This document shows, piece after piece, positions 11,337 through 61,961 of a stretch of 64,000 bases of DNA. The notes beneath the pieces are model-generated. The model made no database searches. It worked only from the letters and a program-made list of their open reading frames with translations, and was not told the origin of the DNA. How positions within the stretch are numbered: the stretch's first letter is position 1; each line of letters starts with the position of its first letter. Location of the stretch: NCBI GenBank assembly GCA_037379345.1, contig CM074515.1:47745743-47809742 (forward strand). Direction: 5' to 3'. The position numbers were made by a program, and so were the translations under genes. This DNA comes from Perna viridis (Eukaryota).

Positions 11337-11363
11337 ATGACTACACAACAGAAGGACAGCGAG
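11337..11363 (+). CDS. FHOD3: Candidate first coding exon of the long FHOD isoform (MTTQQKDSE)
   Basis: aagATGact start, phase-0 donor GAG|gtattg; joins in frame to exon 21358; lies in a CpG-rich, promoter-like stretch. No homology support. Confidence 0.45.
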
Positions 11364-13699
11364 GTATTGTCTTTCTCTTCGTTTTTTGTATTAAACTAAG
11401 GCCAGTAAATTTTAACGTACGGATTTTATTCTCCGTTTTCGGTACCAATACCTGCAGTTTTGTCTTTCAAGTTGTCAAAACTGGACCCATATCAGCCCCG
11501 AGATAGCTCTCTGGCCTGTTTATAGCATACATGTATCATACGGGTTTTTTTCATATTTTCATATTATCATACATATAACAACCAAACACCCATATTACGT
11601 GTAATCATTGAGTTTGCCCATGGGTGTGTAGGTCGAGGTTGTTACGGGGTGTTATATGTGGAAATACGTGTACTGTGTAGCAAATGTTTCAACAACTGGG
11701 TATTTATCAGTGTTTATCGCACAACATACATCATTTTGGGTCTTTTATGGATGCATAAGGGAAGATAACATTTATAGTATATATATATATATTATTATCG
11801 ACTAAACTTAGAGAAACTTAAGTGCAACCTCCTAGGTCAATAAAAACTCGTATCAACCTCTGCAAAATACTTTTCATTTACTATGATTAGGTAGACGTAT
11901 ATGTACGAAAGTCGATGTAAATTGATTCTCTAGGGCTTGGTTTAAGCAGGTTTCATGATTATGTAATTTTGTATTCATGGTTCCATCAACAGTGTTGTGT
12001 TCCTGCTACGTGTCTAACAGTTTAGAAACACCGTACCAATCACCTCGTTAATTTCTCACAATATCTTTTAGATAACGAGTGACTCACAAGGCGATTATTT
12101 GATCAAGAAAAAAGTATTACTGAGCATAAACATATGTTCTCTAATTATCATCTTCATTACCCTCACATGTTAATCAACCTTAATATCTGAGGATTATGTA
12201 TGCATCAGTTCCCCATTTCCCCCCCGTACCACTTCGCCGCACCGACGACTAACACCGAAAGTTGGGAATGAACAATTGTAGAAAAAACGCGAGTAATACT
12301 ACTCAGTGAGCGAAATTAACAACCCACGTGACTTTAATATTCAGTTTCAGATATTTGGAACTGTTATCAAATTATTCTATTTTGATGGTTTGAGATTTTT
12401 ATCTTTACCGCCTATGTGATGATACTCCACTGTATTCCCAGACAGTTTTGATTCTGCCGTCAACGAGTTCAGTAATATTTTGGCTCAGGAAATGCATTGG
12501 AAGAAATAGATATTCGAGATGTAGCTTGGATTTTAATATTGTTTTACTTTCTTTAGTGGACCAAATTTTTGTATTATGTATCGGAATCGTTACTCAAAGG
12601 ATCTTTTAAAGAGAACAGTAAGTTATGTATTCTTCTGTTTTTCAGTATCGTTTATGTCCTGTTTGTGTATATTTGTCATCCGAACTCAGCATTAACGCGA
12701 TTTCAAATAAAACAAGGTCGTCATAATTCGAATATTAGAATGCATTTGTTTTAAGAATCAATTTATAAGGAATCGTAAAGTAGAAGAGTAAAATGTTTTG
12801 ATTTTCATGACACAAAATAAGTATCAATATTTTAATACTGCATTACCATCAATGATTGGGTTTTCGTGAAAGTAGGGATATTGTTTTTACTTAAGTTTGT
12901 TTAAAACATGTTATTAAGAAGCAATAAAGATAATTCAGATCTTCAGTTTACTTTATCTATCAGATTAACATTTACATCAAGTTGGCACTTACACCCGCCT
13001 ATTACATAATCTGCAAAGTATTTCGTGTGCTTCATGTAAAATAATGCACGTGCAGCATCAGAATCTTAACACTATACTGTCTATTTGAGTAAGTGAATAT
13101 TTTTTCTTCATCTTGAAGAAATGTAAACAATAGCAAAGTAAATAAAGTGGGATAAATTAAACGAAGAAATTCTTAATCTTCTTCAAGCTGAAATTGGACG
13201 TGAAAGTTTAAACAGCGTATGAAATGACCTAATCACAAACGTCCATCTGGACCTTATCTATGTACATTTTATAGATTATCCCATTAATTCGTGTATCTGT
13301 GACCAACCCCTATCGTGCTGTTGGCAGTATATTGCATGTGCTTGAGTAAAAACACATGTTAGATCCCATTCCGACATGTTCTATCAACTTCTACACGCTC
13401 TGCAATTATCTGTATAATATTTTTATTCCGTTACGTCAGAAGTATATCTTTTCCGAGAAATAAATCATATGGGATTGCAGTTTTTTTTATTTTATAAGAA
13501 AGTGCAATAAGAAAGCTGAAAAAATGATTGAAATCAAGAATTTGCACAAAAGCCAATGCAAGAAATTAAAGCAAGTTGCGCTACCCAAAATGTATTACGG
13601 TAGAATGCAATCGAACAACACTAATAATTTTGTCTTTTTGATTGTGATGGAAAACTAATATAATGCTGTAATGGCGTCAATTTTCTATTACTCTTCTTC

Positions 13700-13878
13700 T
13701 GCTCCAAGTTTTATTGGAGTCCGAGTTGCTCATTTTCTTTCGTTTCCTTGTACGTATTAATTTATTTTGGTTATTTTATTTCTTTGTTGTATGTGTCTGT
13801 TTTCTCTGTCTGGTCTTTACCCTTGGATTGCGTTCTTCTGAATTCCGCTAGAATCTTGGTACCCTTGATTACTCTCTC
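13700..13878 (+). mobile_element. Interspersed repeat family A, copy 2
   Basis: Aligns by eye to 7961-8151 and 23701-23899. Confidence 0.8.
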
Positions 13879-14116
13879 TCTACTTTTTATGCCTTTCCTG
13901 TTGGACTTAAAAGCAGTTGACTTTTTTCTAATATACGTTGTGACTTTATTCTAACTTACGTCGTTTAAATGATGAAAGTCAATGCAACAACGTGGTTCTA
14001 TGTTAAAGTACCTAGTAAATGTCTATCGTGCAGCTAAGGCGAAATGGAAACCCGTCGATTTTTAAGTTCGACTCCTACTTGCCCCAACATGTTATCAATA
14101 AACATCCTGGCTTGTA

Positions 14117-14322
14117 CACAAGCAAATATTTTCACGTGAAATTCATATTAATCGAGATTCACATAAAATTCATGTGAACTTCACATTAAATTAACGTGAT
14201 ATTCCCGTGAAATTCACTTAACATGAATTGCATGTGAACAATTCGAATTTCACATAAACTCTGCCACAAAGTTTATTTGCTCAGTTCGGGAGAAAAAATC
14301 ATGTGAAATAATTTTGCCTGTG
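14117..14322. mobile_element. Non-autonomous DNA transposon with CACAG(G)CAAA-type termini and internal ttcacatgaaa-like repeats, copy 1
   Basis: 5' cacaagcaaa, 3' tttgcctgtg; internal short repeats; 3' ~70 bp shared with 15746-15981. Confidence 0.75.
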
Positions 14323-15745
14323 TGTAAGTAATCTAGTCAGGCAACATGTTGATAGAGTGAGCAAGTCACTTTGTTTTTACTATATACAAAACTGTATACA
14401 TCGCTCGCTATCTAAAACGAAGAGGGGTTGCATGACGGGGTTGCATCTGTCAAATATTTCAAGATACAGCTATTCTGTATAATAAGAATTTGAAAAAAAT
14501 CCATTAATATTCCAACAAGAGCAATCGAAAATTTAAAATTATTTCATTGCCAAATTATAAATAATTCCATGATATATTTACATGTTCCCCTTCTTTAGAG
14601 ACATTTTGGAGAAAAGACAGCATTGTCGACTATGTATAATCGATGACTTTTCGGTTCTTTTGGTGAGAGAATCTTCTAGATGTTTGTAACTAACATTTTT
14701 AAAGCATTTCAAAGAAGACGGTTTGTAAATGTAAAATTTGTATACGGAAAGCAGTGGCGTAGTCAGGGCCATATTAATGTGGAAGCCTTTCGTAGCACAG
14801 AAAGGAGGGAGGGATTTATTTTGGTTGGTTAATGATGCTAGCATGATGAAGCCGTGGCATCTTGAAATAAATTTCTCCAATAAACATAACGCAAACCATT
14901 AAATTCTGGAAAGTTTGTCCAAGCGGAAATTATAGGTTCCAGTCATCGTAAGAAGTATAAATTGTCGAATTCTTAAAGAACAAATAACATGTACATTTAT
15001 ACAGAAATAAACATTAGAAGTTAAGTCTAACGGTACATGTCTGATGATTCCAGAAAATTGATAGTCCGGACCCTATCGATGCCCCCAAGTGTTTCTTCTG
15101 GAATGATCATAGGTTTGAGCTTTCTCTACATCTTTTTTTATTATTATAGTATTTTATCGTTCTATGGTCTGGATATATAATTATCTTCATGTCTGTCAAT
15201 CTTTTTTTCACTTTTCCGGATATAGCTTTAGGACCGATAAACCAAATCTTTTCGAACTTTGACATAATGCCTTGGACAGTAAGATGAGTAGAAAATACTT
15301 AATACACTAGAACAAGTTCCTAGTTTCATTTTTTCTTGATTTGCTTGATTTCCCATCGCTCTTTTGGCTTAAGATGATCAGTTAATCTATTGAACTGTCT
15401 TCAGGCTTTAAAACATTAGTCTTTTTATTTATTTATTTGTGTTATTATTAACCATGGAATACTTGATTACACAATCACGCTCAGGGTAAACAACCGTACA
15501 TCCGTTGCCATAATCCTATCCTAAAATATACTCTAAATAACAAATGAGGGATATTTTTTCCAGGAAATGTTGCCAGATACATTCGAAGTACATCTATATG
15601 AGATTATTGGCCTATGTTTAAACTAAGTACAATAAAAGGGGTTGCTTCAGACTGTAGAAACTGAAGTTTTATTTCAATGTGTACATAATTACTAGTTTGA
15701 TACTCCCTTTCCAGTATCATAGTTACATCTTAGGATATATATAAA

Positions 15746-15981
15746 CAACAGGTAAATACTGTTCTGGTGAAATTTATGCGAGATGAGTTACATGTGAAAT
15801 TCATCTGAACTTCACATGAAATTAGTATGATTTTCACAAGAAATTCATTTGAAATTTACCTCATGTGAAGAGTCTACATAAAATTCACATGAAGGTTGAT
15901 TTATATAAATTTCATGTGAACTCTGTCACAACGTTTATTTGCTCAATTCAGGCGAAAATCATGTAAATAGTTTTGCCTGTG
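15746..15981. mobile_element. Same family as 14117-14322, copy 2
   Basis: Shared aactctg.caca..gtttatttgctca.ttc.gg.gaaaa...atcatgt..aata.ttttgcctgtg end and the same internal repeats. Confidence 0.75.
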
Positions 15982-17724
15982 TGATTGGTTTAAAGCAAAA
16001 AACATGATCTTGCATTTCGCTAAAAATAAAATTAAAAAAAAGTTTTCTATATTTCAAATCAATTATTTTTCCTGTAGTCATCTTGAATATTAACATTACG
16101 GTGGGAATGCGAAATCCACTTATTAAAACTTGAAATATTTATCGGTTGGTAGATTTCACTAATTTTTATATGCATTAAATACATGAAATAGATAATAAAT
16201 AGTATGCATTCATGAGTCCCTTTTTCTTTTACATGTATAAACCGATACTGTATGTATCATACTCTCGGAATCTTATATGTTTTCTTTTTAATTAGACTCA
16301 AGTATATTAACTCAGCTTTGTTCATTGTTGTAGGGGAGTATCATAATGCAATTGATACTTGGTTGATGTTAATACATAATGGTACAGATTTATGTATATA
16401 AAGAACGATAACCTCTTTCCCCAGACCAATCAGATGGCCTCTTTTACACTTCTCTCATATATTTTGCGATCACTGCTTATCAGTTCACATTCACCTTGAA
16501 TCAGTTCTATGATTGAGCCAATTCTTCGTACCTTCGAGACAATAACATATGTTATGCAAACTGTAAGTGCAGTATGTTCCTTCAGACATTTTGTTTCGTT
16601 GTAATTTATATAAAATTTATAAATATCAGACAGAAGGTGGTACATGCATTTAAAGAAAACACAAACTTCACTTTTAATTTCTGATTCAGTAAACAGTTAT
16701 TAGTCTTAATTAGTTGTTTGGTGGTATCAAAACTTAAATAAATTTTATTAAAAAAAAATGTTGTAAAAGTTATCGTTATTGATTTGGTTATTTATATGGG
16801 GAAATATATGTGCAAATTTATCTAAAACACAGATTGGTATACTGAAAGGACTGTGGTTTTGTATAGAACTGTAAAATATGGCAAATATATAGGCTAGAAA
16901 CCACTAATTCCACTTCCCATAGGCTTCTATGCTAATTTCACAATATTCAATGGCTTCTCTGGACTTTACCTTAACTTTAACCTGCAGAGGACTATATATC
17001 AGCATGATTCTACATATGTCAGCTCACAATCCTCAGAGTGGCATGTGGGGTTAGCAGACTTGCATCGCAGTACTGGTCACCGGAAGTGAAGGGTCTATAA
17101 ATAGCATGGGAAATCCCAGTGTTTTCACAAGATAGGGGTATATTTAGAAATCATTATGGAGATTTGGCTTCACATCACAAGAAGCAAAATGCACCTATAA
17201 AATGTACAGAAATGTTTTTCCTTTCAGAAACTGTTTAAATTTTTTAAATAAGATGAGAGCTTTTTTCACAGCACTATGAGGAACAGAGGTAATTTCTGCG
17301 TAGGACTATTTTTGCGTACGTTCCAAATGCTCATTGGTTGAATTGATGGTCTGTAACCTATATACCGAAAAAGCATCGTCGCTGGTTCAGTGGGGATTTC
17401 TGCACAATGTTTCTCCTGTTACATGTTTGTATGGATAAGTCCTACGTGCGTAATTTCCATCAAGCTCCGAACAACGCTGATTCTATTATAGATGAATTAA
17501 ACGTCTGCTGCAGCGTGGAGCTGGATGCACATAATAAGCCTCAACGAAAAATTACTTCTCAGATATGTTACATATGGGTTCAGTTCTACATTAAAGAGTA
17601 CAGTTTAAAACATGTTTTGCAACGGTGTTCGTATCGACTCGGTACACTCATTCTATTGCAATATGATATCGTATCGATATCAATATACCTGCTTTTGATA
17701 TGCTTGTTTACTATATCACATCTA

Positions 17725-18035
17725 CACAGCCAAATGTGCCACATATGATAATCATATGGTGCTCGATTCATATGATAATCATATGGTAATCATATGACAA
17801 TCATATGATACTGAACATATAATAGTCATATGATTATCAAATGATTCTCATATGGTAATTTTGGCTTAAAAACACATGATAATCATATGTTTGTGAAAAA
17901 CATAGGATTACCATATGATAACCATGCGACAGTCATACGTTTACCGAAACATATGATTATCATATGGTGCTCGATTTATATGATAATCATATGATGCAAA
18001 CCATATGATTCTCATTTGTGGCACATTTGCCTTTG
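17725..18035. mobile_element. Non-autonomous DNA transposon (CMC/EnSpm-like architecture) with catatgat(a/t) repeat array and TA flanks
   Basis: TIR cacagccaaatgtgccacatatga ... tcatttgtggcacatttgcctttg; TA on both sides; interior built of catatgataat-type repeats. Confidence 0.8.
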
Positions 18036-18599
18036 TAAAAAATCACTAATCTTATTATCACTTTTTTGCAGCATGAAAAAAGCAATAACGAAGTCAATTT
18101 GCTTTAACACCAGTGAAAGAGACTAACAAACTTCAACACATATATATTAACCAACGCATTTCATTCTTCATTTTCAGGTTCATTAAAGAAAATCAAAAAT
18201 GAGACGAGAACGAACGGTAAAGTTACATCGATGTTGTGTTATCTCACATTTGACAGTTTTCAATCCACTCACAAACTTCAAACACACATTCCAGTTCTTG
18301 CATGCCTCAACTGTTCATATCCGACCTAAAAGCCCACACACAGCAGCAGATGTTCGTTTCTGTATAGAATATCAGCTGCGGTTTCAGAATGACCAGTTTT
18401 GATGTCGTACACACTGATGGCAACTGGAAAGCGTTAAGCGTGGTAAACTTTTTTTCAATGCATTAAATCGTTTAAAGTCTTCCATGGTCAGTTTTAGTAT
18501 AAGTTTCCTTCAGGATCGCTTATCTCCTACTTCTAAGAAGACCTTCACATAATTGGTCCCGTGAGTCCATCGTGTGGATATAACAAAAGCAACTCCGTT

Positions 18600-20445
18600 T
18601 ATTCTTCGATACATCAGCATTTATTGGCAGTTCGTGGAATCGTAAACATTTGCATTACTCAAAGGTTCTATTCTTTGAATAACACATTTTTGGTCTGAAT
18701 TGAAATCAATTTTGTGAATGCGTTGTATGAAGAAGCATTTTTTCCATTTAAATCTATTGCAAAAATGGCATAATGGCAAGGTTTTATTGGTTTTAGGCAA
18801 TCCGTAAATCGCTGTCACGGTTAATAAAATTCTGTTTTTTGTAGAAATTCAAAATAAGAAATACAAAACATTTAAACAATTTTCGGAATATTACAGCATA
18901 TTACAGTTCTCAACAATAATATGAGCGTATTGCTTATCGTTTTGTATCTTTTCATGAACTGTGTGTGCTATTGTCTTAGTATAAGTTGTATTCTATCTTT
19001 CTGTTCATGTGGCTAAAAAAAGCAAAAATAAAACTTTTGGTATGATTATTTATATATTTGAATTGAAACGAACTTGCACGAGAAAAACAAACAAAACACA
19101 AATAATATAGTTACATCAGAGACAGCATGTTTTGTAGAGCTCTTACTTTTGTTGAAACTAATTCCATAGAAAACTATCATTATATTTAATATTTTTTTTT
19201 AATGCAAGCTGGTTTTGTTTACTTTACTTGGTTGATTTATGATTTATGAAATTAGTCTACTTTCAAAAAACGCTTTGGTCATTCTTTGTGTAGAATTGAG
19301 ACATGTGATGGCGTAGTCGCGATGTCAAAGTCTATAACCAAGAATATATGTTGTAGGTTTTGACGCACAGTAAAGATCCCCGTTTTTTCTACTGATATTA
19401 TTTAGCACAAATTTAACTAAAAAAATCATACAAATTTCTAAATTTGAAGGAGAAAAAAACAAACCTACGAACTGACTATATTTTTTTAAGAGTTGGTATC
19501 GGGAACATAACTCTAGTATTAAGTGAAAGCTGAATTGTATTTGTATGCCATTTTAGTTTATTCCTCATAAAACTTGATGAAGATAAAATCCTTTTTTTAA
19601 ATAATCAACTTAACAATTATAGGGCTATCTATTTAACACTTTTACAATGCAAATCTCTTTCAAACTGCCTTTACTGAGAGTACAATAGTTAACTCAGTGG
19701 ATAGAAATGACTGAATGATAATTGCCCGATGATTTACCTATGTCACTTAACTGGACAATTGACACGAAGATTTAAAAAAATCTCCAGCTCAATTGTCCAG
19801 TTACCTAATTCAGCAACCAGCTTGATTCCCTAAAGGTAAATGTCGCATGTAAAATAACATAAGCGTGTCTCTAATTATAAAAGATAAAAAGTTGTATGAA
19901 ACCATCTTAAAGGTTCGTACTAGTGTCTAAAAACCCTCCCGTGTTTACATCTGTTACTATTTGTTATGTAGAATTTTTTTAGATTTATTGCAGACAAGAT
20001 AGAAGTTTATCATTACCAGAAATAACATTTAATGTTGCTTTCCACAAAATATAATTAAAATGAAACTTGTGCTATAAATAAATTGAATAAGCAAAACATC
20101 TTTGTTGCCATGCCAGTTTTATACTAATAGGTTTTTAATTTGTCAAGTAAAGATTTTAAACCTAACAAAGGAGGTATTTTGTGAAACTTTGCCAAAATAA
20201 TCTATTGGTAAAAGACTGGTTCTGTTTGCACACAATACGACTAACATAAAGAGATACACTTCGATTATTTTTTGGAAACACTTCATTTGCTTGAATGTTA
20301 TGAAATCATTCTGATTGGTAAACAAACAATATTTGAACTGCATGGTGAAAGATGTGATTTTACTACAACACCGGCCGGTCGTGACATAACTAACTTAACA
20401 GGAGTTTCTTCAAAAGCAGAGCAAAGTCACCAATCCAGTGCAGAT
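18600..20445 (-). pseudogene. Highly decayed ubiquitin-specific protease (peptidase C19/USP)-like pseudogene remnant
   Basis: Collinear minus-strand fragments: ICTGLVTLLCF*RNSC*VSYVT (Cys-box-like, ~20370-20445), NGDLYC and TPSHVSILH..KRF (~19261-19390), HYAIFAI...SSYNAFTK and VYDSTNCQ*MLMYRRIN (His-box/C-terminal-like, ~18600-18790); many stops and frameshifts. Confidence 0.4.
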
Positions 20446-21357: not shown

Positions 21358-21411
21358 CCTTCGTTCGACAGAGGATACGGAAGTCTAAGCAGTAGTCGCA
21401 GTCACGGATCT
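21358..21411 (+). CDS. FHOD3: 54-nt internal exon of the long FHOD isoform (PSFDRGYGSLSSSRSHGS)
   Basis: Strong acceptor (tctcatttcag|) and donor (|gtaagt); phase 0/0; Gly/Ser/Tyr composition continues into LYDNVGTSYGSKYGG of the 29008 exon; not in the ORF track. Confidence 0.7.
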
Positions 21412-21997
21412 GTAAGTATACCTGTTTATTTGTATTAGAGAGTAGAATTTCCGAAAGCACCCAAAATATAATTTTGCTCTGACAGAATTTGGCAAAGACT
21501 TGCAGTTTTAATTAAGTTTTGGTTATATCAAATAATTAACATGTGTTTTTAATGGCAGGTGATGCTAAATGTATCGTGATAATAGATGCAATCACATCTA
21601 AGATAAATGCTTGATAAATTATGTCATACATTCGGAATAAACAGCTGATTTGGTGCAATGAAGTTTCAATACTTTCATAAACATTTTCGAGAAAAAATCA
21701 ATTGAAACTATAAATAAATGTAGGCCAACACTTGAAAGTATTATTTCTGTGAGAAGTTTAATTTCTGACTGAATGTGTCGACTCTATTGGAGGAGTGTAG
21801 CGAATGGAGTCGTCACATTCTGAGAAGTTGTATAATATTGATTTGTTGTGACATGCATCATTAATTTGATCCTCTATCCTACATAATAACACCTAAATGA
21901 ACTGTCCCGTACTACCATACATCGTCTACTAAGTTACAGCCCTAGATTAAACCTACGAGGAGGAATGACCCGGCCAGCGAAATCTATATTTTTATAT

Positions 21998-22160: not shown

Positions 22161-22254
22161 ATGTTTACATATCTTCCCTGTATCAATTTGATCCGATGGA
22201 GCAGTCTAGCGAATAGAGTCGTCACATTCTGAGACGTTATATATATATATAGAC

Positions 22255-26800: not shown

Positions 26801-29007
26801 TTTCCTTTGTCATTGTATGTTTCAAGAGCAACGACCCTGTAAAAATTATATGTTTTGGTTTTACTTTCAGTCGTGAAAACATTAAGTGTTGACACGCGAG
26901 TTATTTGTTATACCAATTCCTGTATGCCAATCGTGCCTCTGAAAATATTCCGAATAGACTGTCCTCCAGCTTTCTTTCATTTCCTCTCCTCATGTCTTGT
27001 GCAAGGTATTATTTTGCAAGTTCATAGAGCATGAAATGAAGTGTTCTTTAGTCCCTATTTTGACGTTCTTTTGATATTTCTTTTTACATCACATCCAGAC
27101 ATGATATATCCATGAAACTGATCGTTGATCATTTATCGGGTACAAATCAAATGGTAAACAATTGAAAAACTACATAAATCACACATTTATGGATCAAGCT
27201 TCTAGATTTTGATAATAAAATTTTTGTTCGATAGATTTGATCGATTTGTTGTTGGATTGAAAAATCTTTTGAAATAAATGAATTATGTTGATTAAAGTAC
27301 TAGTAAAATTGGCCAAAATTGCATAATTCAAATATTCAATAACATTCCTGGCTTTTAAAAGTGAACTAACCAATCGTACATTTTGCTCACCATAATATCA
27401 CAATAAGCTAATTAATCGATCACTTTTCGATTAATGGCCTGTAAGTTTAATTAAAGATCAGGTTGTTTAGTTGTGAAGTATTTCTGGTAAAAGTAGTGAT
27501 TGGGGAAAAAAGTCATAATACAGTCAATGGTATAAAATAAATATCTGGAAAACTTTCGCTTTCAACTACAAAGATTTGTAACATGATAAAGTGTTCTCAT
27601 TTTAGTAGGTTTTCAAGATCTCTATTCTTGTTGATTATTTCATAAGTAAAACAGCTTCGCTTCTATTATTTTGCGCAAACTTTTTCAATCCAGATAATAC
27701 TTGTTCTAAACTAGTTCTATCAGAAAACACTTACTCGATGCTGATGCGCAGCTGTAAACATATCATAGATAACAGTTGATGCTCCAGTACGTTAGAGGTA
27801 TACAAAAGGGTAACGTCTGGGTGTTTTGAAAACCCATGTCTCCATTTTATCATAAGATGCAACTGAGTGAAATATTATTCTCAAATAACAGCATTTCTTA
27901 TTGATACAATTAAACAATAAATCCCGATATTGCAGATTTTTGGTGCCTTGAGCCTAAATATCGTTTTGTTTACATTTGCACAATGAACAGCATATAAATT
28001 ATATCAAAGAGACTTTCTGATAAATGAGATTATTGAGAAAAAAACGAGTTGATATATCTTTTACTTTAATCGTGTGTTTTTAGCACAAAGCTAGTAATTG
28101 TCTCGCTCTGTATATTCCCCTGATCTATTAATTAGGAGAATGAAGTATAAAGCCAATAGCATAAACCAAAAGATAAAGTTGAATTGTCAAACCGTGCCTT
28201 ACAACTGTTGATAAGCAGCTATATTTTCAATATTAGCAAAAAACAACTAGAAATGTTAATGAATTTATAAGGCCTCTTTTGATTTTTTGACAAATAACAA
28301 AATATGATCCATTCCGTTCAAATCATGGATTTTTTGATAGATAAATTTTTTCAAATTCTTTGAAAGAATTATACGAAATTCCTTACCGCGAAATATGGTC
28401 AAAAGACCAAACAAAAAGACTAGTGTCACAAATTCTGTAACATATTCGGATAATTTTAAAAATGAGATCTTTTTGATGTAGATGGGGTTCATGTTATCCG
28501 ATTCCTCCTTTAGTATAAATATTAAGAATATTAAAACAAATACTGTCCTCCAAAAGAAGCTAATCGCTGTCGTTTTCTCCTATTCCGCATTTAACTATGT
28601 CAAAACAATGTAATTTTTTTTTAGTTTTCACATTTTCGGTATCAAACTAAAACAAAACAAAAATGGAGCAGATTGTGCCCATTGCACGAAACTTTCGGTA
28701 AAATTGTTCACATTCAACCAAATTTCACATTTTTTTTAAAAAAACTTTTGTGGCGTCGAAAACGATGATCGATCGTCTGTCATTCTTCAGGATCTTCTAA
28801 AGAGGCTTCACTTCATAATAAAGAATAAAACTACTTTGCCTTCGATTTGGCACTACAGATGTTCTTTAATTATTTATATCAAAATGCATTGAATCATCTT
28901 CTTCATCAAGCCAAAGTCACATAGCTGAAAGTACATGATTAAGACACTTCAGGATAACAAGAATTATTATTGGAGGGACGTTAATTGTGGTGCTCTTTAT
29001 TTTTCAG

Positions 29008-31822
29008 CTTTACGATAACGTGGGAACAAGTTACGGTTCTAAGTACGGAGGAACAGGACAAAAATCAAGCAACTATTTAAGTCCTTCATACGGATCATCA
29101 TATACTGGAAGTCCACGTGACAAATTCAGTTCATCTGCAAGTCCAAGAGACAAATCGTACGGTTCTCCTAATCCAAATAGATACTCAGGTTATAGTGTAG
29201 GAGGCGTTGGTGTTCGGGACCGAATTCAAAAATTCGCCAGCGGCGATAATCGTGGAAGTAAGGAGATGTATACACCTTTACATAGCGTCAGAGGCAGCTC
29301 ACAATCAAGGGACAATCCAGGTTGGGACAAATATTCTTCGCGAACTGCTAATTCAGACCCTTACGCAAATAGATCAGGATATTTATCAGATTACGGTGGC
29401 AGTAATAGATCTCTAGCATCATATGACAGAGGATCGTCTAAGTCAGGTCGAAGTTACGGTCCTCCAAGCAGAGAAAGTTCACCTATTAGTAGCAGATCAT
29501 CACGTTACGGAGACTATACTAGTGCGTCGCCATACTCAACTTACGAAAACTCGCCACCATTATCTCGACGTTACGAACGTCAACAGTCAGTAGATTACTC
29601 ACCACCGAAGCGGGACGCTGATGACCCTTACAGACGAAGAGAACCAGTTGGTGATAGAAGAAGAGACTCAGTGAGTGATAGAAGAAGAGACTCTGTAAGT
29701 GAAAGGCGAAAAGAGCCTGTCACTGACTATCTTAAACCTCCTCCAACACGGCGGAGGGTCTCATCAAGTGATAGCGATTCTGACGATAGTGCACCTGAGG
29801 CCGAAAAAGACGGTCACAGAGTTCGGTATAAAGTATCTCGTGGAACATCTCCCTTACGAGAGGGAGAGGTTCCAAAAAGAGAACAAAAAAGGAACAAATT
29901 AAAAGACAAAAAAGCTATTGCTAGAACTAAACGAATACGTAACACTACCAGGGAAATAAGGCGAGAAAATATTTACAAAGAATTTAAAGAAATGGCAGAT
30001 GCAGCATGCCAAACAAATGATGTAACACCCAGAAGACGGGGTCGTCGTCAGGTGAACGACGACGATGCGAGAGACAAGGCAGCACTTACAGCAATGGCCA
30101 TGATGGATGACGCTGGCGATGCAAACAATTCTAGAGACTCGTTTTATAAAAACCGTGATAAATTCAATACGCCTGAACAAAAAAAATACTCACATAGAGA
30201 AAATGAAAGTATGCAAGAGCCACCTTCAGAGAAATCATGGCGAAAATCAGTTTACGGTGAAGAACCCGAAGACCAAAGAAGTAGGCAAAACCCACGAACA
30301 AGCACCCCAATGGCTCCTTCGGACAAACGCTCAAGTAGGCACTCACAGGTTTCAGATCGAGAATCGAGGCCTGACTATAATAGATCTTCTTCGAGAGAAA
30401 GCATTTTGGATGACAACCAGGGTAGGCGAAGACGTAGAAGTAGGGAAATATTAGATGAACCTAGTGGACCAGAAGAACCTCCACCATTGCCACCAAGAAG
30501 ATTACGACATGGAAGTCGAGAAATTTTAGACGCACCCGAAGGAGAAGCACCACTTACTCCTGAAACCATTTCATTGAGAGATAGTATAGCAAAAGTTCAG
30601 GAATGGAAACAACAACTTCCTGAACCAGATTCTTATTATGGGGATAGATTGACTCCTAAAGCTCCTAAGTGTAGGCGTGGGGAGCTGGCTCCAAGTGATC
30701 ATTCTGAAGAATATTTTTCTGCACACGACTATCCACCACCACCGCCACCGTCCAGAAATGCAAGAGAGGTATCACCAGAGAGACCTCGTTCTCGTGAACA
30801 ACGATCTTCGGGTGGTTATCATAGAAGCGATTCTGTCAGATCTACTAGAGAAAATTCTCCAGTTTATTCACGTGATACATCTCCTAATAGGTTACGGTCC
30901 CGATCAAGGCGAAGTCGAGAGCATTCTCTTGATAACGTGTTTGACGATGATAAAGACCAACGACCTCCTCCAAATAAAGATTTCCGAAAATCTGCGCTAA
31001 ATCGATCCATTGACAATGGCTATTTCGATAACGGTGATCCAGATCCTCGATATCACCGTCAAGACAGCATACCAACTAAAGGTAATAGAATATCAGGTAG
31101 TTCTTCCGATGCATTTTCTAGAGACGACTCACCAAACCGTGCCAGAAGGATTAGACGGGAAGGTTCACGCGAGGATATGATAGACGAAAGACGTCCAGGC
31201 CATACCAGCGATAGTTCAAATTTCGGTTTTAACAGGGACGGTTCGCCAAACAGAAATCAAGGCAGACGTGTTAGAAGCAGACAAAATTCTCGAGAAGATA
31301 TGTTAGATGACAGGAAGCCATCGAGACCAAGTTCTAGAGAAGGTATGGTTGATGATCGTAGATCATCTAGGTCGAGTAGATCCACTAGTCGTCATAATTC
31401 ACGCGAAGATGTTCTAGAAGAAAGGGGTAAACGGTTTATCGCCAGAGATAGACCTCGTAGTCTTCTTGTAGCAAATGAAAGCAACGAAGGAGGTATGAAA
31501 CGATCGCCTTCAGGGGCGTTTTCGAATGATACACAAGCACTTCCCGATATCGTAAATTCTGGGAAGCAATCTCCTAGAAAAGACAAGAGTGGTTACATAA
31601 ATCAAAAACAAGACATTGATCACGTATTAGATGGAATCCAAGGAGCTCCTGCTGAGTTATCACGTCGTATTGGGAATCATGGTCCCAGGCCTAACTCAGC
31701 AGATGGATACTATATGGATAGTAAGAATATTGATGATGTTTTGAATGGGAGGTCACAAAATCTGATGGATACACCTGTGCCAAAAGCCCCAATCCCTCTA
31801 AAGCCATCTCCTCAAATCCTAG
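29008..31822 (+). CDS. FHOD3: Giant (2,815-nt) exon encoding a low-complexity Arg/Ser/Asp/Pro-rich N-terminal extension of the long FHOD isoform
   Basis: Stop-free for ~940 codons in AT-rich DNA; acceptor tttatttttcag| at 29007 (phase 0); donor cta g|gtaatt at 31822 (phase 1). Assignment to FHOD rests on phase-consistent chaining to 33968-34323 and 37504. Confidence 0.8.
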
Positions 31823-33967
31823 GTAATTACGTCTTGCACTAAAAGTGACGACGTTAACAAAATATGTCTAAATATATACTCAAAGAGAAGTCATATTTTG
31901 CTGATGTCTTAACGTTCGATATTGTGCCACACTTTGGATGTTCCCAGCATGGGTGTAGAATTAGTGTATAGATTGTCCTCTTCATACATGCCTAAAATTC
32001 TAAATTCTTTCCATGTCTTTTTCTCTACCTCCTATATTTAGTCTATATAGTTTATACTCTAGCGTAACCTAGGTGTATCTATTCCGCTTTTGTGGAACCA
32101 AGTTCTCTTTTGTTTGCTTTCCACGTGCATGTCTTGTGGCTTTTGCTTGACTGTTTGAATTTCAAAGACTATGGCTTCGTATTTTTTGTGAATAAAGAAT
32201 GGCTTCAGAGTTAATGTTAATTTTAGCAATAATATATAAATAACCAATCAAAACATTTTAAGATGAATTTTGCTACACGGCATTTTTTCAATAGAATTCT
32301 TTAATTAAGAAGAGTTGAATTAACAATGTTGATAAAGTTGAGACATATTATTTTTCTTTCGATCTACGACGTTGCACTGTTTATGCTTTGGAGTTTTTTG
32401 CTTGTCTGTTTAATTTACAGGGAATTTTCCACTTAATTTCCTTCAACCTTAAAGCGTAGCAGATAAAGAAAATAGATGTCTGGTTGATGGATTCCTTTGG
32501 CATTCCTTCTAGTGTTTTATACTTAGTTTTGTCACGCATTGTTTATAACTGAAGTTGGTATTAAAGATTAAATACCTGACAAAATACTGTCTTACTTCAG
32601 AGAAAATTAATAGATCTTCTTTGGATATTTTTGTGACACGTATATATTTATAACATTTCTAGCGCCTTTAGTTTTGCTTTTTATCTGGCCTGGAAAAAGA
32701 ATCGGAAACGTTTAAATGGTGCCGTTGGAATTCGTTATAGTGGGCATCATAAGCCAATCTCTGTCGCCAACTAATTCACTGTCAGTCTTTGTCTATCCCA
32801 TCCTGTCTTGCACGATAACAACCAAAGCAGGGGTAATCTAGCTTCATATTGTAGTTTGTCTTTAATTTTAATCGTAAGGGAAAACGAAAAGTGGTCATTT
32901 GTGCCACATTAAACTGTATTGTAATTCCCCTTTATGAATAAAAACTGTATCCAATTGTATTACATGTAAATTTTGAATAATGATTAAAGTTGCATATAAA
33001 TCAAGTTATTTCATCGCCCTTTGTAGCTTGATATGCGTATGGAGCTAGTTTACTGTCCCATTTCAGAACTTTGTGATCTCCAATTCTTTCCAGCAACTTT
33101 TCAAGGGGACTGTTAATGTGTACACGTACATGGAACGGTTGTGTGCCAAAGGAGCTGTATTTAAGTGGAAGTTTCTCTGTAACACACTCTTGGGATGTTG
33201 TTTTGTTTGTGTGTCATGCTATTCATTAATAATTATGCTTTTTGGTTTTTTGGTATTCAATGGAATACCGACAAAGGTAAAACTTGAGTTAAAACTAATG
33301 TTAAGATCGTTGAGGAGGTAATGGGTACATTGCCTCTCAAGTCGAGTAACATCATTAACTGACAAAGATTCTATTTTTATTACCTAAAATGACATACAAT
33401 TATTGCATACCTGTAGTCGTAAATTGATTCAAACGCCATAAAGCAACACTAAGTACGAATGATTTCATGATTTTGGTTTTTTTAAGATAAAAGCGACAAT
33501 GTCCTTAATAAAAACGGAGCAAGGATACAACTTGGCTTTAGAATGATATTCATGTATTTTAGTTTGCCACTGACCTGCACCACTGGTCTAATGTAGACCA
33601 ACATATTAATGACATTTATTAGTGGTGAAGATATGGAAATTCTTTCTGCTGTATTCACATAGAACATGACAACATACAGCACAATTAATGATAAATCTTC
33701 TATTTTACGATTATTCTTGTGGTGCAAGCCAAGGTCAAGCTTACATGTATTTGCTTTACTGTTGGAGATATAGGAAAATAATTGAGGCTGTTCTATTTTT
33801 CACGTTTGCTAGATATGGATTAATAAAATGTTTAAATGGGTATTTTCTCTAATTATTTTGGAAACACATGTTACATATGTTTTGTTGAAAAAATTGTCCG
33901 TTCGTTATGTCTGATTCGGAATATGATAATGAAAATCTTGAATGGTATGCAGACGTAAGTCTTTCAG

Positions 33968-34323
33968 GACCAACGCTATTTACTTCTGATAATGAAATTG
34001 TTCATTCTGATACAGAAGAAAAGCTGATTGACATTGACTCACCTGTAACGCCGAAGAAAGCCGCCATCAGCAATGCGCCTCCAAACAGAGGTCATGATGC
34101 CAGGATGCGACGCACTATTTCCGAGACCGGGCAACAGATGTGGGACAGCCTAAAAAAGAACAAAGGTTCGGTCACTATAACTGATATTTTACGACTTTGT
34201 GAAAAGCCGAATTCAAAGGTCATCAGAGTACCTGGGGTGACAGAAGGGTTCAGCGATGTCAACTTTAAAGGCTATCCATCCGCTAACGAGATGCTGGAAA
34301 ATATGGGTGTCGACGTTAAAAAG
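33968..34323 (+). CDS. FHOD3: Long-isoform exon joining the extension to the FHOD GBD (…GPTLFTSDNE…NMGVDVKK); may instead begin at ATG 33907 or at acceptor 34016
   Basis: Phase-1 acceptor ctttcag| matches the phase-1 donor at 31822; strong phase-0 donor AAG|gtaag at 34323 matches the phase-0 acceptor at 37504. Confidence 0.7.
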
Positions 34324-35574
34324 GTAAGCGAATATAAAAACGTGCGAAGAGGCATAACTCTAATTTATATTTTAAAAATAGTTGAGATTTTTTTCAAGGG
34401 GAATGCACTCGGATGTCCCTGTAAATGTACGAGTAAACTTTAACGCGCATTCTGCTAAATTAGGAAATTGATTTTGGAATAGTTTGCTTTTAGTAAGCTC
34501 TTCAATCTTGCCTTGGATTTTTTAAGCGTAAAGTACAAAGCGGTTGTTTACGGATGGTTGAAGTTTTCATTCATAAATTGCAACAGAGATTCCAAAACAC
34601 TTGCGTTCCAAAACCTAGTTATTACAATGTAATATATCAAATATAAAATAAAGAATACTCGATCAAGCTATTTAAAATCAATACAGCTGCTTTTATAAAA
34701 GTTTATAATCAAATTGTAGACCTGCTTACGTCAATGTATTCGAATTTAAATCTGACAGATCCACAATTTGTAAATTTAGGATTAGTGCTCACTCTCCCGC
34801 AATTAAGAGGGGACCCAATCAAAATATCCCCAAAAGTAACCGTATTTGCACTTCATGCAATACTTCACAAAATGAAGATAAAGTGTATTTTTTCTTACAC
34901 TGTCCAGTCTATAAAGTACTCAGACAAGTTCTCATCAACAAGATAAAAACAAAGACAAAAGTTTCTTCTCAATAACAGAAAATAATATATCATTAATATT
35001 AAACAGTAAATGTTTGGTTATTTTAATAGCCTTAATTGGATAAATAAATAAATGTAGCCTTGTCAATTAAATAAAGTATAAGTTTAAGGCACCTCCGCTC
35101 CAGTTTTTCAATACGGTTATTATTAGAACTGTCATATCTTATATGTTTAGATTTGTGTATTGTGTCATAACCATTTACTGTAAATGTGATTGAACGAATA
35201 AATATTTGTATTTTGTATTTGTAAAAAAAATACAGGTCTATGGTTATTTATGTCTCTGGCTTTATCATATATTTTAGAAGGTTTTTTTGTTTGTGTTTTT
35301 TTTTCTTTTAAAATTTGTAATTTTATTTTCTTTATTTTTTTTAACACGGAGAGAGACATTGATAAAAAAACAGCTTTTGAGTTGTAGCCATGTACACTTT
35401 TAGTTTCACCTTCTTATGATCTTTGTTTATTTACTTCAATTGATTTTAGTTTTCATAAGATAGGCCTATTCAACATGGGGCGTATAGGGACATAATTTTA
35501 TGTCCAAAACAATTTTTAAAAATGCTAACACATAAAAACATCCTAACTAAAGCAGTTTAATAGTTAAATAATAT

Positions 35575-35860
35575 GTTTCTATGCGCAGATTGCGTCGTCT
35601 GCTATGTTTTTACTTCCGCCGCAGGTAAAAAATTAATCATCAAAACAAACGTAAAGAAGAAGATCCGATATCAGATACGACGTCTGATAACGGTCACTTA
35701 CATAGTTTCTTGTGAATGAAAGGTTAATCGGAAGGGTAGAACCTTAATTTATTTAGAATAAACTTGGGATTTAATTTTGAAATGCGTTTCAATGGCGCAG
35801 GAATACATCAAAGTTCGGAGGTCAGACATGCGGAATCAGTAAGATCAAACATGGCGACCT
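35575..35860 (+). promoter_or_regulatory. Probable internal promoter/5' UTR of the short FHOD isoform
   Basis: CpG-rich patch directly upstream of ATG 35851, with an ETS-like acttccg (35612) and a YY1-like aaacatggcg overlapping the ATG; CpG becomes scarce just downstream. Confidence 0.55.
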
Positions 35861-36015
35861 TCGAGTGTCGAGTGCAATACTTGGACGATACGGATCCTTT
35901 TTCAAGTACAAATTTTCCAGAACCAACAAGACCACCTTCATATATTTTTCATAGGACTGTACCGTTGTTAAATCAAATAGGAGGAGTTCATAAACTCCTT
36001 GGAGCTCCCCACAAA
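35851..36015 (+). CDS. FHOD3: FHOD1/FHOD3 (Fhos) formin, short-isoform exon 1, GBD N-terminus (MATFECRVQYLDDTDPF…GAPHK)
   Basis: Closely resembles the FHOD3 N-terminus (MATLACRVQFLDDTDPFNSTNFPEPSRPP…APHK); good Kozak context; donor AAA|gtaag. Confidence 0.95.
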
Positions 36016-37503
36016 GTAAGTTGGAGACAAACATATATGTGAACTTGATTTCAGGTAACGAATGTTTACATATGATACCAGACAATCTCTACATCAGCTG
36101 TTCGAAGCGCGAGTGTTCGAATATCGTGGTTTATTTTCTAGGCTTATTGTTGACTTGTGCTTAACAGTAAATGTTTAAAAACCTCGTTATTTAGACCCTA
36201 TTCATCTATTTACTTGATATGCGGGGCTTCATTTTTTTTAAATTATTTTCATGGTTATACATGTATATATATTTTTTTCTGAATATGTACATGTATATAT
36301 GTCATCTATTGACGGCCTTCCTAGAATATAAGAAAATGTTATGGAATATGATAATGGATCCTGTATTTGGTAACTTTCACTATTTTGAGTTTTGACATTT
36401 CCTGACAGAACTTGGCTATCTGTATAATGAGTATGTATTTACTTAAATGAATATAGATGATTTTCTAAAATTCTACCAATTTAAGAAAAAAAATCCATTT
36501 GGGTTCAGAAATTGTTTATTATCGTAAACCAAGTAGACCAAATGTGAAATTTTAAAGATTAACATTCAAGAATGTGGTAAATGTGGTTTAACTATTACAT
36601 TTGACATTAGAATCAGGATCTACATGTACTTATCAGCTATACTATTAGTTCCATACCACATTGTTCATGCATATATGTAGATACTTTGAAACATGAATAA
36701 CTAAAAGTTGTTCTAATGGAAATGATGTTTTTAGATATCACTGTATGCTATTAGGAAGGGATAGTCACAGACCCACAACATGTGTTACAGGAAGTTCAAC
36801 TTATTCCTGCTGTTCTAGATGTACAAAAATGTATAAGCAATGTACATTGTAACATAATAGTGGTGCATACCAACAATTGTCAAAGTCAAATTTTATCTGA
36901 TTTCAAATAGCCCATCCATCATATGCAAAGCCTAAAATCATATTAGTAAATATATTGAAAACAAGAGGAAATTCAAAGTAATCTTCTTTTATTTTTTTAA
37001 ACAATTTTTGTCTGGAATTGCTACAATTACCTTATATGTAACTGTATTGAATTTGGAGTATTCCAGAACTGATATTTATTACTCAATTTGCTATTAAAAA
37101 TTCGTTAAGAATTGAAGAAGCATATAATGGAGTACATTTTGTACATGTACACGCACAATGCATTACCCTTTTCACTCAAATGTACATGTACTTTGAATCA
37201 TTTTGTATGAACATTTTGTATTTTTGATTATTTTTGTTTGTTTTTTTTATTATAATAATGTTTACTACTAATACAAGCCTTAGCTTGTTTCAGAACCCTA
37301 CGAGAGTCATGATCTTAAAAATAAATCCATACCTGGTAAATGCTCATAATTGCAATTTACATGTACATAGCACATTTTCAGTTTGTAAACTTTGATGTTT
37401 TTTTAATGTAATTTCATACAGAGTGCCTTTACCATGCATGCTGGCTGATTTCTAAATAAATCAAAATACATGTACAAATGTACCAACATTTTGTATATTT
37501 TAG

Positions 37504-37628
37504 CTTGAAGATTGTGCTTTACAAATATACCGATATCATAATGGAACTCAGGGTGATTATGGTACATATTTGGATCTTGAATCTAACATTGATGAACAAA
37601 GCGAAGAGCTGGAAGGGTTTCAAGACCA
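37504..37628 (+). CDS. FHOD3: FHOD exon (LEDCALQIYRYHNGTQGDYGTYLDLESNIDEQSEELEGFQD); first exon shared by the isoforms
   Basis: tttag| acceptor, |gtaagt donor, FHOD GBD motifs LxDCxLQ and YLDLE; phase 0/2. Confidence 0.93.
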
Positions 37629-61879: not shown

Positions 61880-61961
61880 AACACATGCATAGAAGTTATT
61901 TGATAATTCATTTGTGACGATAAACACATGCATAGAAGTTATTTGATAATTTATTTATGAC
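61880..61961. repeat. Tandem duplication, period 43 bp, 2 copies
   Basis: aacacatgcatagaagttatttgataatt.attt.tgac twice. Confidence 0.9.

What the first reader, a model, noticed from the sequence alone, without database searches (positions are those of the whole stretch)
11337..37628. Cryptic ~1,084-aa disordered N-terminal isoform of the FHOD formin, assembled from four upstream exons
Seen: the 951-aa 'orphan' ORF is an internal exon with no real start. Exons 11337-11363 (phase 0), 21358-21411 (0/0), 29008-31822 (0/1) and 33968-34323 (1/0) chain without a frame break into the shared exon at 37504, giving 3,252 nt or 1,084 aa. Known: long N-terminally extended Fhos isoforms are described in Drosophila muscle. 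Inference: this mollusc has an analogous tissue-specific, possibly muscle, giant isoform that automated annotation could split off as a separate uncharacterised gene.
Basis: partly seen in the sequence, partly recalled or inferred. Interest (0 to 1): 0.75.

Follow-up and report, generated by a model that had tools for sequence, protein, structure and literature searches.

The report
Long-tailed isoform of a mussel formin
The big "orphan" reading frame is a real giant exon giving this mussel-like mollusc's FHOD actin-assembly gene a roughly 900 to 1,070 residue floppy front end; related molluscs already carry the same form in their annotations.

Summary
The core of the finding holds. The 951-aa ORF is a giant internal coding exon (29008-31822). 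Spliced contigs from public runs join it to a second upstream exon, and join that exon (donor 34323) to the shared FHOD GBD exon at 37504.

- The exon-4 acceptor used in RNA is 34016, not 33968, which removes 16 aa.
- The proposed start exon 11337-11363 has no support. The conserved start exons are 12576-12617 (MYRNRYSKDLLKRT) and 18199-18216 (MRRERT). Both match the N-termini of Mytilus edulis RefSeq isoforms.

Three in-frame donors inside the giant exon (31342, 31720, 31822) give extensions of about 913, 1039 and 1073 aa.

The extension replaces the first half of the GBD rather than adding to it. It is predicted to be mostly disordered, with conserved short motifs.

It is not cryptic in relatives. 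RefSeq lists long FHOD3 isoforms in mussels, oysters, limpets, abalone and snails. Some other annotations do split it off, for example in Lottia.

I found no relatives outside molluscs and no fly-type Trp-Trp repeat. Muscle specificity was not tested. This is an ordinary orthologue of annotated isoforms, of modest interest.

The parts
11337..11363 (+). It is not supported as the coding start.
   Evidence: The ATG and GT donor are present. The peptide ranks 260th and 172nd of 386 candidates against the M. edulis N-termini, and 329th of 366 against the oyster, ark-shell and Physella N-termini. No RNA test was possible.
12576..12617 (+). Likely first coding exon 1a, MYRNRYSKDLLKRT, phase 0, donor ACA|GTAAGT. 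A possible acceptor at 12557 would make it an internal exon behind a 5'UTR exon.
   Evidence: It ranks 1st of 386 candidates (score 37, next locus 21) against M. edulis isoform X27 N-terminus MYRSRLNYPRDTLRKT. It ranks 1st of 366 (29 against 22) versus the oyster and Tegillarca N-termini. This is inferred from comparison and was not seen in RNA here.
18199..18216 (+). Likely alternative first coding exon 1b, MRRERT, phase 0, donor ACG|GTAAAG, with an acceptor-like AG at 18177.
   Evidence: It is 6 of 6 identical to the N-terminus of M. edulis isoform X28 (MRRERT|PSFDRGYGS). It ranks 1st of 386 candidates (score 30, next 13). Inferred, not seen in RNA here.
21358..21411 (+). Exon 2, PSFDRGYGSLSSSRSHGS, phase 0/0.
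   Evidence: AG/GT sites are present. It is 18 of 18 identical to M. edulis X27/X28 and to M. galloprovincialis P0061, and 17 of 18 to Tegillarca P0007. In all of these it sits directly before LYDNVGTS. The peptide occurs once in the six-frame translation of the window. The junction was not tested with RNA.
29008..31822 (+). Giant exon 3 (2,815 nt, 938 codons + 1 nt). It is rich in Ser, Arg, Asp and Pro and predicted to be mostly disordered. It has alternative phase-1 donors at 31342, 31720 and 31822.
   Evidence: ORF and shuffle control. 25 homologues, 21 and 41; every hit that carries a name is a mollusc. 67 invariant columns across 18 sequences. Joints 31822>34016 (X1, X2, X4) and 31720>34016 (X1, X4, X9). 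A loose end of an X4 contig equals 31313-31340, which places a third donor at 31342. 14 runs guessed to be RNA hold 85-95% of its sampled words.
34016..34323 (+). Exon 4 as used in RNA (308 nt, phase 1 in, phase 0 out). Its last ~75 aa form a module conserved across molluscs that ends in GVDVKK.
   Evidence: Joints into 34016 and out of 34323. Homologue alignments start at 34015-34018. The module is conserved in 18 distinct sequences. It has no Pfam match.
35851..36015 (+). Canonical first coding exon of the short isoform (MATFECRVQYLDD..., 55 aa). It encodes the first half of the GBD and is skipped in the long isoform.
   Evidence: Pfam Formin_GBD_N positions 2-52 of 89, E 3.8e-22. Joint 36015>37504 in X1, X2 and X4, with contigs starting at 35658-35872.
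37504..37628 (+). Shared exon encoding the second half of the GBD (LEDCALQIYRYHNG...).
   Evidence: Pfam Formin_GBD_N positions 53-88 of 89. It is the acceptor for both 34323 and 36015.
38294..38314 (+). Optional 21-nt microexon (adds KKQSEE-type residues), flanked by AG and GT.
   Evidence: The letters following 37628 in the X9 long-isoform contig map here. X1, X2 and X4 contigs go straight to 40855. The same insert is in M. edulis X27/X28.
40855..62921 (+). Further shared FHOD exons (FH3 region and linker) running to the window's end.
   Evidence: tblastn of M. galloprovincialis P0003 and Tegillarca P0007 gives collinear hits at 40853-40918, 45263-45331, 46706-46834, 52946-53074, 56390-56506, 60619-60717, 61105-61314, 62121-62315 and 62751-62921.

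Best explanation
This is the 5' half of a mollusc FHOD-family formin gene that makes two classes of protein from different first exons.

The short class starts at 35851. It carries a complete Formin_GBD_N domain, exon 35851-36015 plus exon 37504-37628.

The long class most likely starts at one of two small distal coding exons, 12576-12617 or 18199-18216. It then runs through an 18-aa exon (21358-21411), the giant exon (29008 to one of three in-frame donors at 31342, 31720 or 31822) and exon 34016-34323. From there it splices to 37504 and skips the canonical first exon.

The result is a formin whose first GBD half is replaced by about 913-1073 aa:
- a long Ser/Arg/Asp/Pro-rich, mostly disordered chain carrying about 15 short motifs conserved across molluscs;
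- then a conserved ~75-aa module that abuts the second GBD half.

Shown: the giant exon is coding and conserved; the splices 31720 or 31822>34016 and 34323>37504; and the loss of the canonical GBD first half.

Inferred: the two start exons and the 21411>29008 splice (from comparison only), and use of a separate distal promoter.

Proposed by analogy with fly Fhos: the extension acts as a localisation and regulation module, with docking motifs and many RxxS-type phosphosites. It would send the same actin-assembly machinery to a different cellular site and change GBD-dependent control.

The confidence given is for the gene structure. I put the functional proposal at about 0.5 and muscle specificity at about 0.35.
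For: - ORF and chance control.
- Splice sites and phases.
- RNA-type contigs have zero depth in the introns and GT..AG joints. 31822>34016 appears in 3 of 4 runs, 31720>34016 in 3 of 4, 34323>37504 in 3 of 4 and 36015>37504 in 3 of 4. One 5,054-nt X9 contig spans exon 3, exon 4 and the GBD exon.
- Third donor at 31342.
- Database proteins with the extension followed directly by LEDCALQIY: 23 listed. They include RefSeq isoforms of M. edulis, C. gigas, C. virginica, Patella, Physella, Haliotis, Littorina and Gigantopelta, and a 7,207-nt Logan transcript contig (P0067).
- Start exons.
- Pfam: long isoforms match GBD_N only at positions 51-88, while the short Patella isoform matches 1-89.
- Disorder: 783 of 937 residues of the Batillaria homologue have pLDDT under 50. 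Composition is S 15%, R 15%, D 9%, P 9%.
- Conserved motifs: 67 invariant columns in 18 sequences.
- Fly precedent for a localising long N-terminus: PMC5061545, passages read.
Against: - The runs are only guessed to be RNA and are assembled contigs. They show that a junction exists, not its abundance, its strand or the transcript ends.
- No RNA evidence was obtained for anything upstream of 29008. The start exons rest on similarity of 6-16 aa peptides to RefSeq models of another genus.
- The third donor (31342) rests on one X4 contig with 28 loose letters.
- The function is entirely by analogy. I found no sequence similarity to anything outside molluscs, and tissue information was not available.
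- The structure model is low confidence overall (mean pLDDT 40, 16-row alignment). It was made on a truncated homologue, so it cannot say whether the GBD fold survives.
Confidence: 0.8

Rival explanations
1. One reading: the start is at 11337-11363, exon 4 begins at 33968, and the extension is 1,084 aa.
For: All of its splice dinucleotides and phases are valid, and 33968 has a good polypyrimidine tract. Contigs drop rare variants, so minor use cannot be excluded.
Against: No contig in 4 runs uses 33968, and all junctions into this exon land at 34016. The 16 extra residues have no counterpart in three homologues or in any junction listed. MTTQQKDSE ranks 260th and 172nd of 386 candidates, while two other mini-exons match M. 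edulis N-termini.
Confidence: 0.05
2. The upstream exons form a separate, uncharacterised gene that ends shortly after 34323. The link to FHOD would then be read-through or chimeric noise.
For: The frame stays open past 34323 to a stop at 34443. Lottia, Elysia and several ENA/Logan calls hold the extension as a stand-alone protein.
Against: The stand-alone calls end in read-through of the same donor (for example ...IDVSKVS) and look like genomic ORF calls. Depth falls to near zero after 34323 in all 4 runs, and the 34323>37504 joint is present in 3 of 4. The junction position and phase are conserved from bivalves to gastropods.
Confidence: 0.04
3. The mollusc extension descends from the same ancestral giant exon as the Neopteran insect Fhos extension. 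On this view it is an ancient protostome feature rather than a mollusc invention.
For: The gene architecture is the same: a short isoform with a small unique N-terminus (63 aa in fly, 55 aa here), against a domain-less 5' coding exon of about 1,000-1,200 aa (PMC5061545 passages). The Atlas listed a 1,266-aa arthropod 'hypothetical protein' cluster, but at a score of 0.75, which is below the usable range.
Against: Exhaustive phmmer gave 21 hits and the profile search gave 41. Every named hit is a mollusc. The fly extension is described as having a conserved Trp-Trp repeat (PMC4601495 passage). WW occurs 0 times in the window's exon and in 13 homologues. No insect sequence could be fetched, so no direct comparison was made.
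Confidence: 0.12

Closest known systems
RefSeq long isoforms of mollusc FHOD3-like genes. Examples are Mytilus edulis isoforms X27/X28/X30, Crassostrea gigas isoform X13 (XP_034337878.1), C. virginica X16, Patella vulgata LOC126815796 X1-X7 and Physella acuta LOC131935409 X6.
   Same: The exon order and junctions are the same: a small start exon, then PSFDRGYGS..., then the giant exon, then EEKL[IV]DI..., then ...GVDVKK|LEDCALQIY. Identity to M. edulis over the giant exon is 71-72%. The same internal donor is used (NSRE|EEKL), and the same optional KKQSEE insert is present.
   Different: These are computed models in other genera. This genome's own annotation was not seen. The window's organism differs by about 25-28% in the extension from M. 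edulis and M. galloprovincialis.
Drosophila Fhos (knittrig) long isoforms, PH-PJ.
   Same: Alternative 5' exons give a short or a very long N-terminus on a common FHOD core. The long part comes mainly from one large coding exon (1,198 aa in fly) with no recognisable domain (PMC5061545, passages).
   Different: No sequence similarity was detected, and there is no Trp-Trp repeat (PMC4601495 passage). The fly's Z-disc targeting and muscle requirement are experimental results; nothing comparable was tested here. Whether the fly splice lies at the same GBD position could not be checked.
Mammalian FHOD3 muscle isoform (Iskratsch et al. 2010, seen only as a reference-list entry; details are recalled).
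   Same: Alternative splicing of a FHOD formin gives a form with different localisation in muscle (recalled).
   Different: As recalled, the mammalian variant is a small internal insert near the FH2 region, not an N-terminal extension replacing half of the GBD.

Membership tests
FHOD-family formin | N-terminal FHOD-type GBD (Pfam Formin_GBD_N) | tested here: met
   35851-36015 matches profile positions 2-52 (E 3.8e-22). 37504-37628 matches 53-88 (E 7e-12).
FHOD-family formin | FH3 (FHOD1/3 type) following the GBD | tested here: met
   Collinear tblastn hits at 40853-62921 to residues of P0003 and P0007. These cover the part where Pfam FH3_FHOD1-3 matches P0007 at 1220-1355.
FHOD-family formin | FH1, FH2 and DAD | not tested
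   These lie beyond the window's end, according to the scan notes s1-758087 and s1-758124. The orthologous proteins carry PF02181.
Fhos-type long N-terminal isoform (as defined in Drosophila) | Alternative 5' exons with one very large domain-less coding exon, spliced to the common FHOD exons | tested here: met
   The giant exon has no Pfam match. Spliced contigs join it through exon 4 to 37504.
Fhos-type long N-terminal isoform (as defined in Drosophila) | Sequence kinship with the Neopteran extension, including its Trp-Trp repeat | tested here: not met
   WW occurs 0 times in the window's exon 3 and in 13 homologues. No named non-mollusc hit. No insect sequence was available for a direct comparison, so distant kinship is not excluded.
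Fhos-type long N-terminal isoform (as defined in Drosophila) | Muscle requirement and Z-disc targeting through the extension | not testable with these tools
   Run, sample and organism names were coded, and contig depth cannot rank expression.
Mollusc FHOD long isoform (RefSeq models) | Conserved ~75-aa module ending GVD[VT]xK, spliced in phase 0 to LEDCALQIY | tested here: met
   The window module aligns with 17 other distinct sequences. The joint 34323>37504 is present.
Mollusc FHOD long isoform (RefSeq models) | N-terminal mini-exons M..R..|PS[FY]DRGYGS..|.YD | tested here: inconclusive
   Matching exons are present at 12576, 18199 and 21358 with correct phases. Their splicing was not seen in RNA.

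The most novel reading that the evidence does not exclude
Molluscs and winged insects each attach a roughly 1,000-aa disordered chain to FHOD. In both, a giant 5' exon swaps out the small canonical N-terminal exon. In molluscs this removes the first half of the ubiquitin-like GBD and puts an unrelated, phylum-wide conserved 75-aa module in its place. If the two extensions are unrelated, this is convergent evolution of a localisation tail on the same formin at the same gene position. It would also imply that the long form escapes or rewires GTPase or GBD-dependent control. If they are related, the published view that the extension is specific to Neoptera would be wrong, and the long isoform would date to early protostomes.
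Probability: 0.3. Interest if true: 0.55.

Novelty: new member of a known kind. Interest (0 to 1): 0.35.

Why it matters
For annotating this genome, it settles that the 951-aa "orphan" ORF belongs to the FHOD gene. It also gives corrected exon coordinates, three alternative internal donors and two likely start exons.

More broadly, a 2014 review states that the N-terminal FHOD extension sets fly knittrig apart from other FHODs and is specific to Neoptera (PMC4601495, passage read). My four paper searches found no mention of a mollusc counterpart. Database models nevertheless show one across bivalves and gastropods.

In the mollusc long isoform the canonical GBD first half is replaced. This offers a natural experiment on how FHOD targeting and autoregulation depend on that half-domain, possibly in mollusc muscle.

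The finding remains an orthologue of isoforms that are already annotated, so the surprise for a specialist is moderate.

Tried and rejected
- **Chance ORF or repeat.** Rejected by the shuffle control and by conservation across molluscs.
- **Search for short transcript-derived fragments spanning exons 1, 2 and 3.** I used the first 120 aa of exon 3 as the query. 6 candidates came up and none passed, so there is no information on the 5' junctions.
- **Exon-duplication idea.** I asked whether the exon-4 module is a diverged copy of the canonical GBD first half. Exon 4 has no Pfam match. hhalign of 18 distinct alt modules against 2 distinct canonical halves gave probability 0.16%. One of the 18 rows is the Bulinus P0018 model, which carries an artefactual insertion of canonical sequence. 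13 duplicates out of 31 sequences were dropped. I found no support for the idea.
- **Structure.** AlphaFold2 on the Batillaria partial protein P0024 with a 16-row alignment gave mean pLDDT 40.3.
  - There is a helix at 393-425 (the LSLRDSIEKV..WKQ motif, pLDDT 52-67).
  - There is a moderately confident helical C-terminal part at 830-910 (pLDDT 56-87).
  - The fold search against 48,161 chains matched only the long helix (best Z 3.6, none at Z 5 or more).
  - It is therefore unknown whether the long isoform keeps a ubiquitin-like GBD.
- **ESM Atlas look-alikes.** The best score was 0.79, below the usable range.
- **A loose end of an X2 contig at 35637.** It maps to another chromosome-scale contig of the same genome. 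I set it aside as a repeat or chimeric contig.
- **Upstream ORFs at 2560-3064, 8662-8949 and 10366-10665.** There was only a weak DUF7323 hit with no passing stretch, and I did not pursue them.
- **The window's spliced model.** It was never joined. Each exon was searched on its own.
- **Paper supplements.** I did not ask for them. The supplements of PMC5061545 and PMC4601495 may hold insect alignments that bear on the homology question.

Full report
**What is in the sequence**

The window has one outstanding open frame, 28987-31842 on the + strand (951 aa). It runs 967 codons from stop to stop. The next longest frame in the window is 184 codons. The longest was 177 in 100 shuffles of the window and 242 in 100 shuffles with the exon's own composition.

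I read every proposed boundary. The ATG at 11337, the GT donors after 11363, 21411, 31822, 34323 and 37628, and the AG acceptors before 21358, 29008, 33968 and 37504 are all present in the stated phases. The sum is 3,252 nt, or 1,084 aa.

The exon at 37504-37628 matches Pfam Formin_GBD_N positions 53-88 of 89 (E 7e-12). A canonical first coding exon, MATFECRVQYLDD... at 35851-36015, matches positions 2-52 (E 3.8e-22). Downstream, collinear tblastn hits to two bivalve FHOD proteins run from 40853 to 62921. The locus is therefore the 5' half of a FHOD-family formin gene. Earlier scan notes place the FH2 and tail beyond the window's end (not checked by me).

**RNA evidence**

- 20 public runs hold the giant exon. 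14 of them, with small contig sets, are guessed to be RNA and hold 85-95% of its sampled words.
- I laid the contigs of four of these runs, from four studies, on 31700-37690.
- Depth is zero across 31900-33699 and across most of 34500-35499 and 36300-37099. All joints have GT..AG ends, so these behave as spliced RNA.
- Joints seen:
  - 31822>34016 in X1, X2 and X4;
  - 31720>34016 in X1, X4 and X9;
  - 34323>37504 in X1, X2 and X9;
  - the canonical 36015>37504 in X1, X2 and X4.
- One X9 contig of 5,054 nt carries the end of exon 3, exon 4 and the GBD exon in a row. It extends 2,912 nt upstream of 31700, which is 220 nt more than the rest of exon 3. I could not see those letters.
- These are assembled contigs. 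They show presence, not amounts, strands or ends, and a hole proves nothing. X9 showed only the long-form junction and no piece on the canonical first exon, which hints at sample-specific use but no more.

**Corrections to the model**

1. No contig uses the acceptor at 33968. All three kinds of joint into this exon land at 34016, 48 nt downstream and in the same frame. Homologue alignments also begin at 34015-34018. The 16 residues GPTLFTSDNEIVHSDT are therefore not part of the protein seen here.
2. The giant exon has at least three phase-1 donors.
   - 31822 and 31720 are seen directly as joints (A|GTAAGA at 31720).
   - 31342 is inferred from one X4 contig whose 28 letters before 34014 equal 31313-31340.
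   - The 31342 and 31720 donors are the ones used in M. edulis isoform X27 (NSRE|EEKL) and in the M. galloprovincialis model P0003 (YYMD|KEKL).
   - RefSeq N-termini are MYRSRLNYPRDTLRKT|PSFDRGYGS... and MRRERT|PSFDRGYGS... in M. edulis, and MSYRRYSRDLGSS|PSFDRGYGS... in oysters.
   - I scored every ATG...GT phase-0 mini-ORF upstream of 21358 (386 candidates).
   - 12576-12617 (MYRNRYSKDLLKRT|GTAAGT) is first against the first M. edulis peptide (37, next locus 21).
   - 18199-18216 (MRRERT|GTAAAG, 6 of 6 identical) is first against the second (30, next 13).
4. Exon 2 is well supported by comparison. It is 18 of 18 identical to both Mytilus species, although the giant exon is only 71-75% identical.

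With the 12576 start, the extension is 1,073, 1,039 or 913 aa, depending on the donor.

**What the extension is**

- The giant exon has no Pfam domain. Its composition is 15% Ser, 15% Arg, 9% Asp and 9% Pro, with seven SRE..(I/L/M/V)(I/L/M/V)(D/E)-type motifs and three SPNR motifs.
- An alignment of 18 mollusc sequences has 67 invariant columns grouped in short motifs. Examples are SGYLSDYGG, DSAPEAEK, RGTSP, EKSWRK.VYG, LTPE.LSLRDSI.KV..WKQ.LP, DFRKS.LN, FGFNRE.SPNR, DID..L and MD.PVP.
- AlphaFold2 on the Batillaria homologue gave pLDDT under 50 for 783 of 937 residues, with one moderately confident helix over the LSLRDSI...WKQ motif.
- It therefore behaves as a long disordered chain carrying conserved linear motifs.
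- The last ~75 aa before the splice are conserved in 18 distinct sequences from bivalves and gastropods..QMW..L...KG.V.I.D.L.LCEKP....I.VPG.....NF.GY..A.E.LE..GVDVKK. This is the best-predicted part of the model (pLDDT 56-87).
- The extension replaces part of the GBD rather than simply extending it.
  - Long isoforms match Formin_GBD_N only at positions 51-88, whereas a short Patella isoform matches 1-89.
  - The replacing module shows no kinship with the canonical half (hhalign probability 0.16%).
  - This agrees with the scan's sibling note s1-779276.
- Whether a ubiquitin-like GBD fold still forms is open. The model was of a truncated protein with a shallow alignment, and the fold search matched only a single helix (best Z 3.6).

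**Distribution and what is known**

- Exhaustive phmmer against 1.84 billion representatives found 21 proteins. A profile search found 41.
- In one search, 19 of the 41 carry a name, and all 19 are molluscs. 19 of the 41 also carry FHOD Pfam domains. The unnamed ENA and Logan rows cannot be assigned to a taxon.
- Long isoforms of 2,070-2,339 aa appear in two kinds of record.
  - RefSeq lists them for Mytilus edulis, Crassostrea gigas and C. virginica, Patella vulgata, Physella acuta, Haliotis rufescens, Littorina saxatilis and Gigantopelta aegis.
  - Submitters' annotations list them for Sinanodonta, Mya, Mactra and Solemya.
- A 7,207-nt Logan contig encoding 2,007 aa (P0067) shows the spliced form as a transcript in a Mytilus-like species.
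- The isoform is therefore not cryptic at the database level.
- Other annotations do break it. Lottia and Elysia hold the extension alone, Batillaria holds it only as a partial model, and Bulinus fuses it to part of the canonical exon.
- In print, the fly Fhos long isoforms are described as follows (PMC5061545, passages read).
  - They arise from a separate promoter and contain a 1,198-aa domain-less large exon.
  - They are required and sufficient for flight-muscle sarcomeres.
  - Part of the extension directs the protein to Z-discs.
  - The short isoform has a 63-residue unique N-terminus.
- A review calls the extension specific to Neoptera and notes a conserved Trp-Trp repeat (PMC4601495, passage read).
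- The mollusc exon has three Trp and no WW, as do 13 homologues.
- My four paper searches and a look into a formin phylogeny paper (PMC5047451, passages) found no mention of a mollusc FHOD extension. Supplements were not consulted.

**How it most likely works**

- Shown: two classes of transcript share the exon at 37504 and differ upstream.
- Inferred: the long class starts from one or two distal promoters more than 17 kb upstream. The short class starts near 35.65 kb, where contigs containing the canonical exon begin at 35658-35872 with no upstream joint. Contigs cannot prove a start.
- Inferred: choice among the three internal donors, and of the 21-nt microexon at 38294-38314, tunes the length of the linker.
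- Proposed by analogy only:
  - The disordered chain and its conserved motifs act as docking and phosphoregulatory sites that place the formin at a particular structure.
  - Swapping the GBD first half changes the GBD-dependent control known for FHOD1.
  - I give the localisation/regulation idea about 0.5 and muscle specificity about 0.35.

**Verdict**

Two coordinates are corrected, and three alternative donors and two likelier start exons are added. This is an orthologue of isoforms already annotated in related molluscs and an architectural analogue of fly long Fhos. It matters for annotation and offers a modest comparative lead rather than a surprise.

Noticed in passing
window 38294-38314: A 21-nt microexon flanked by AG and GT. 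It is included in the X9 long-isoform contig and skipped in the X1, X2 and X4 contigs that follow 37628. The same KKQSEE insert is in M. edulis X27/X28 but not X30.
   Followed up: partly
window 31342, 31720, 31822: Three phase-1 donors inside or at the end of the giant exon all splice to 34016. They trim 160, 34 or 0 residues from the disordered chain. Oyster and Littorina RefSeq isoforms use still other internal donors.
   Followed up: partly
window 35762, 35871 and after 35809: In the 5' leader and start of the canonical exon, contigs differ from the window. There is A>G at 35762 (X1, X2), A>G at 35871 (X1) and a 6-nt insertion after 35809 (X1). These are probably allelic variation.
   Followed up: no
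window 35225-35637, 37149-37465, 34842-34893: Short contigs of X2 and X4 lie in the introns and run on into unrelated letters. One such loose end maps to another contig of the same genome (L001, G000:C3), which suggests dispersed repeats transcribed or assembled from elsewhere.
   Followed up: partly
window 12557 and 18178: Both candidate start exons are preceded by a polypyrimidine tract and an AG. They may therefore be internal exons behind untranslated first exons. If exon 12557-12617 were joined to 18178-18216, an in-frame TAA would follow.
   Followed up: no
window 2560-3064: Overlapping ORFs of 139 aa (+) and 165 aa (-). The + one has a weak whole-protein hit to DUF7323 (E 2.5e-7) with no single stretch passing.
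   Followed up: partly
window 34084-34130 (exon 4): The motif ARMRRTISETG is identical in all Mytilus-group sequences seen (P0003, P0062, P0067). As far as I recall, it fits a basophilic-kinase RRxS/T site. It is not conserved in oysters or gastropods.
   Followed up: no
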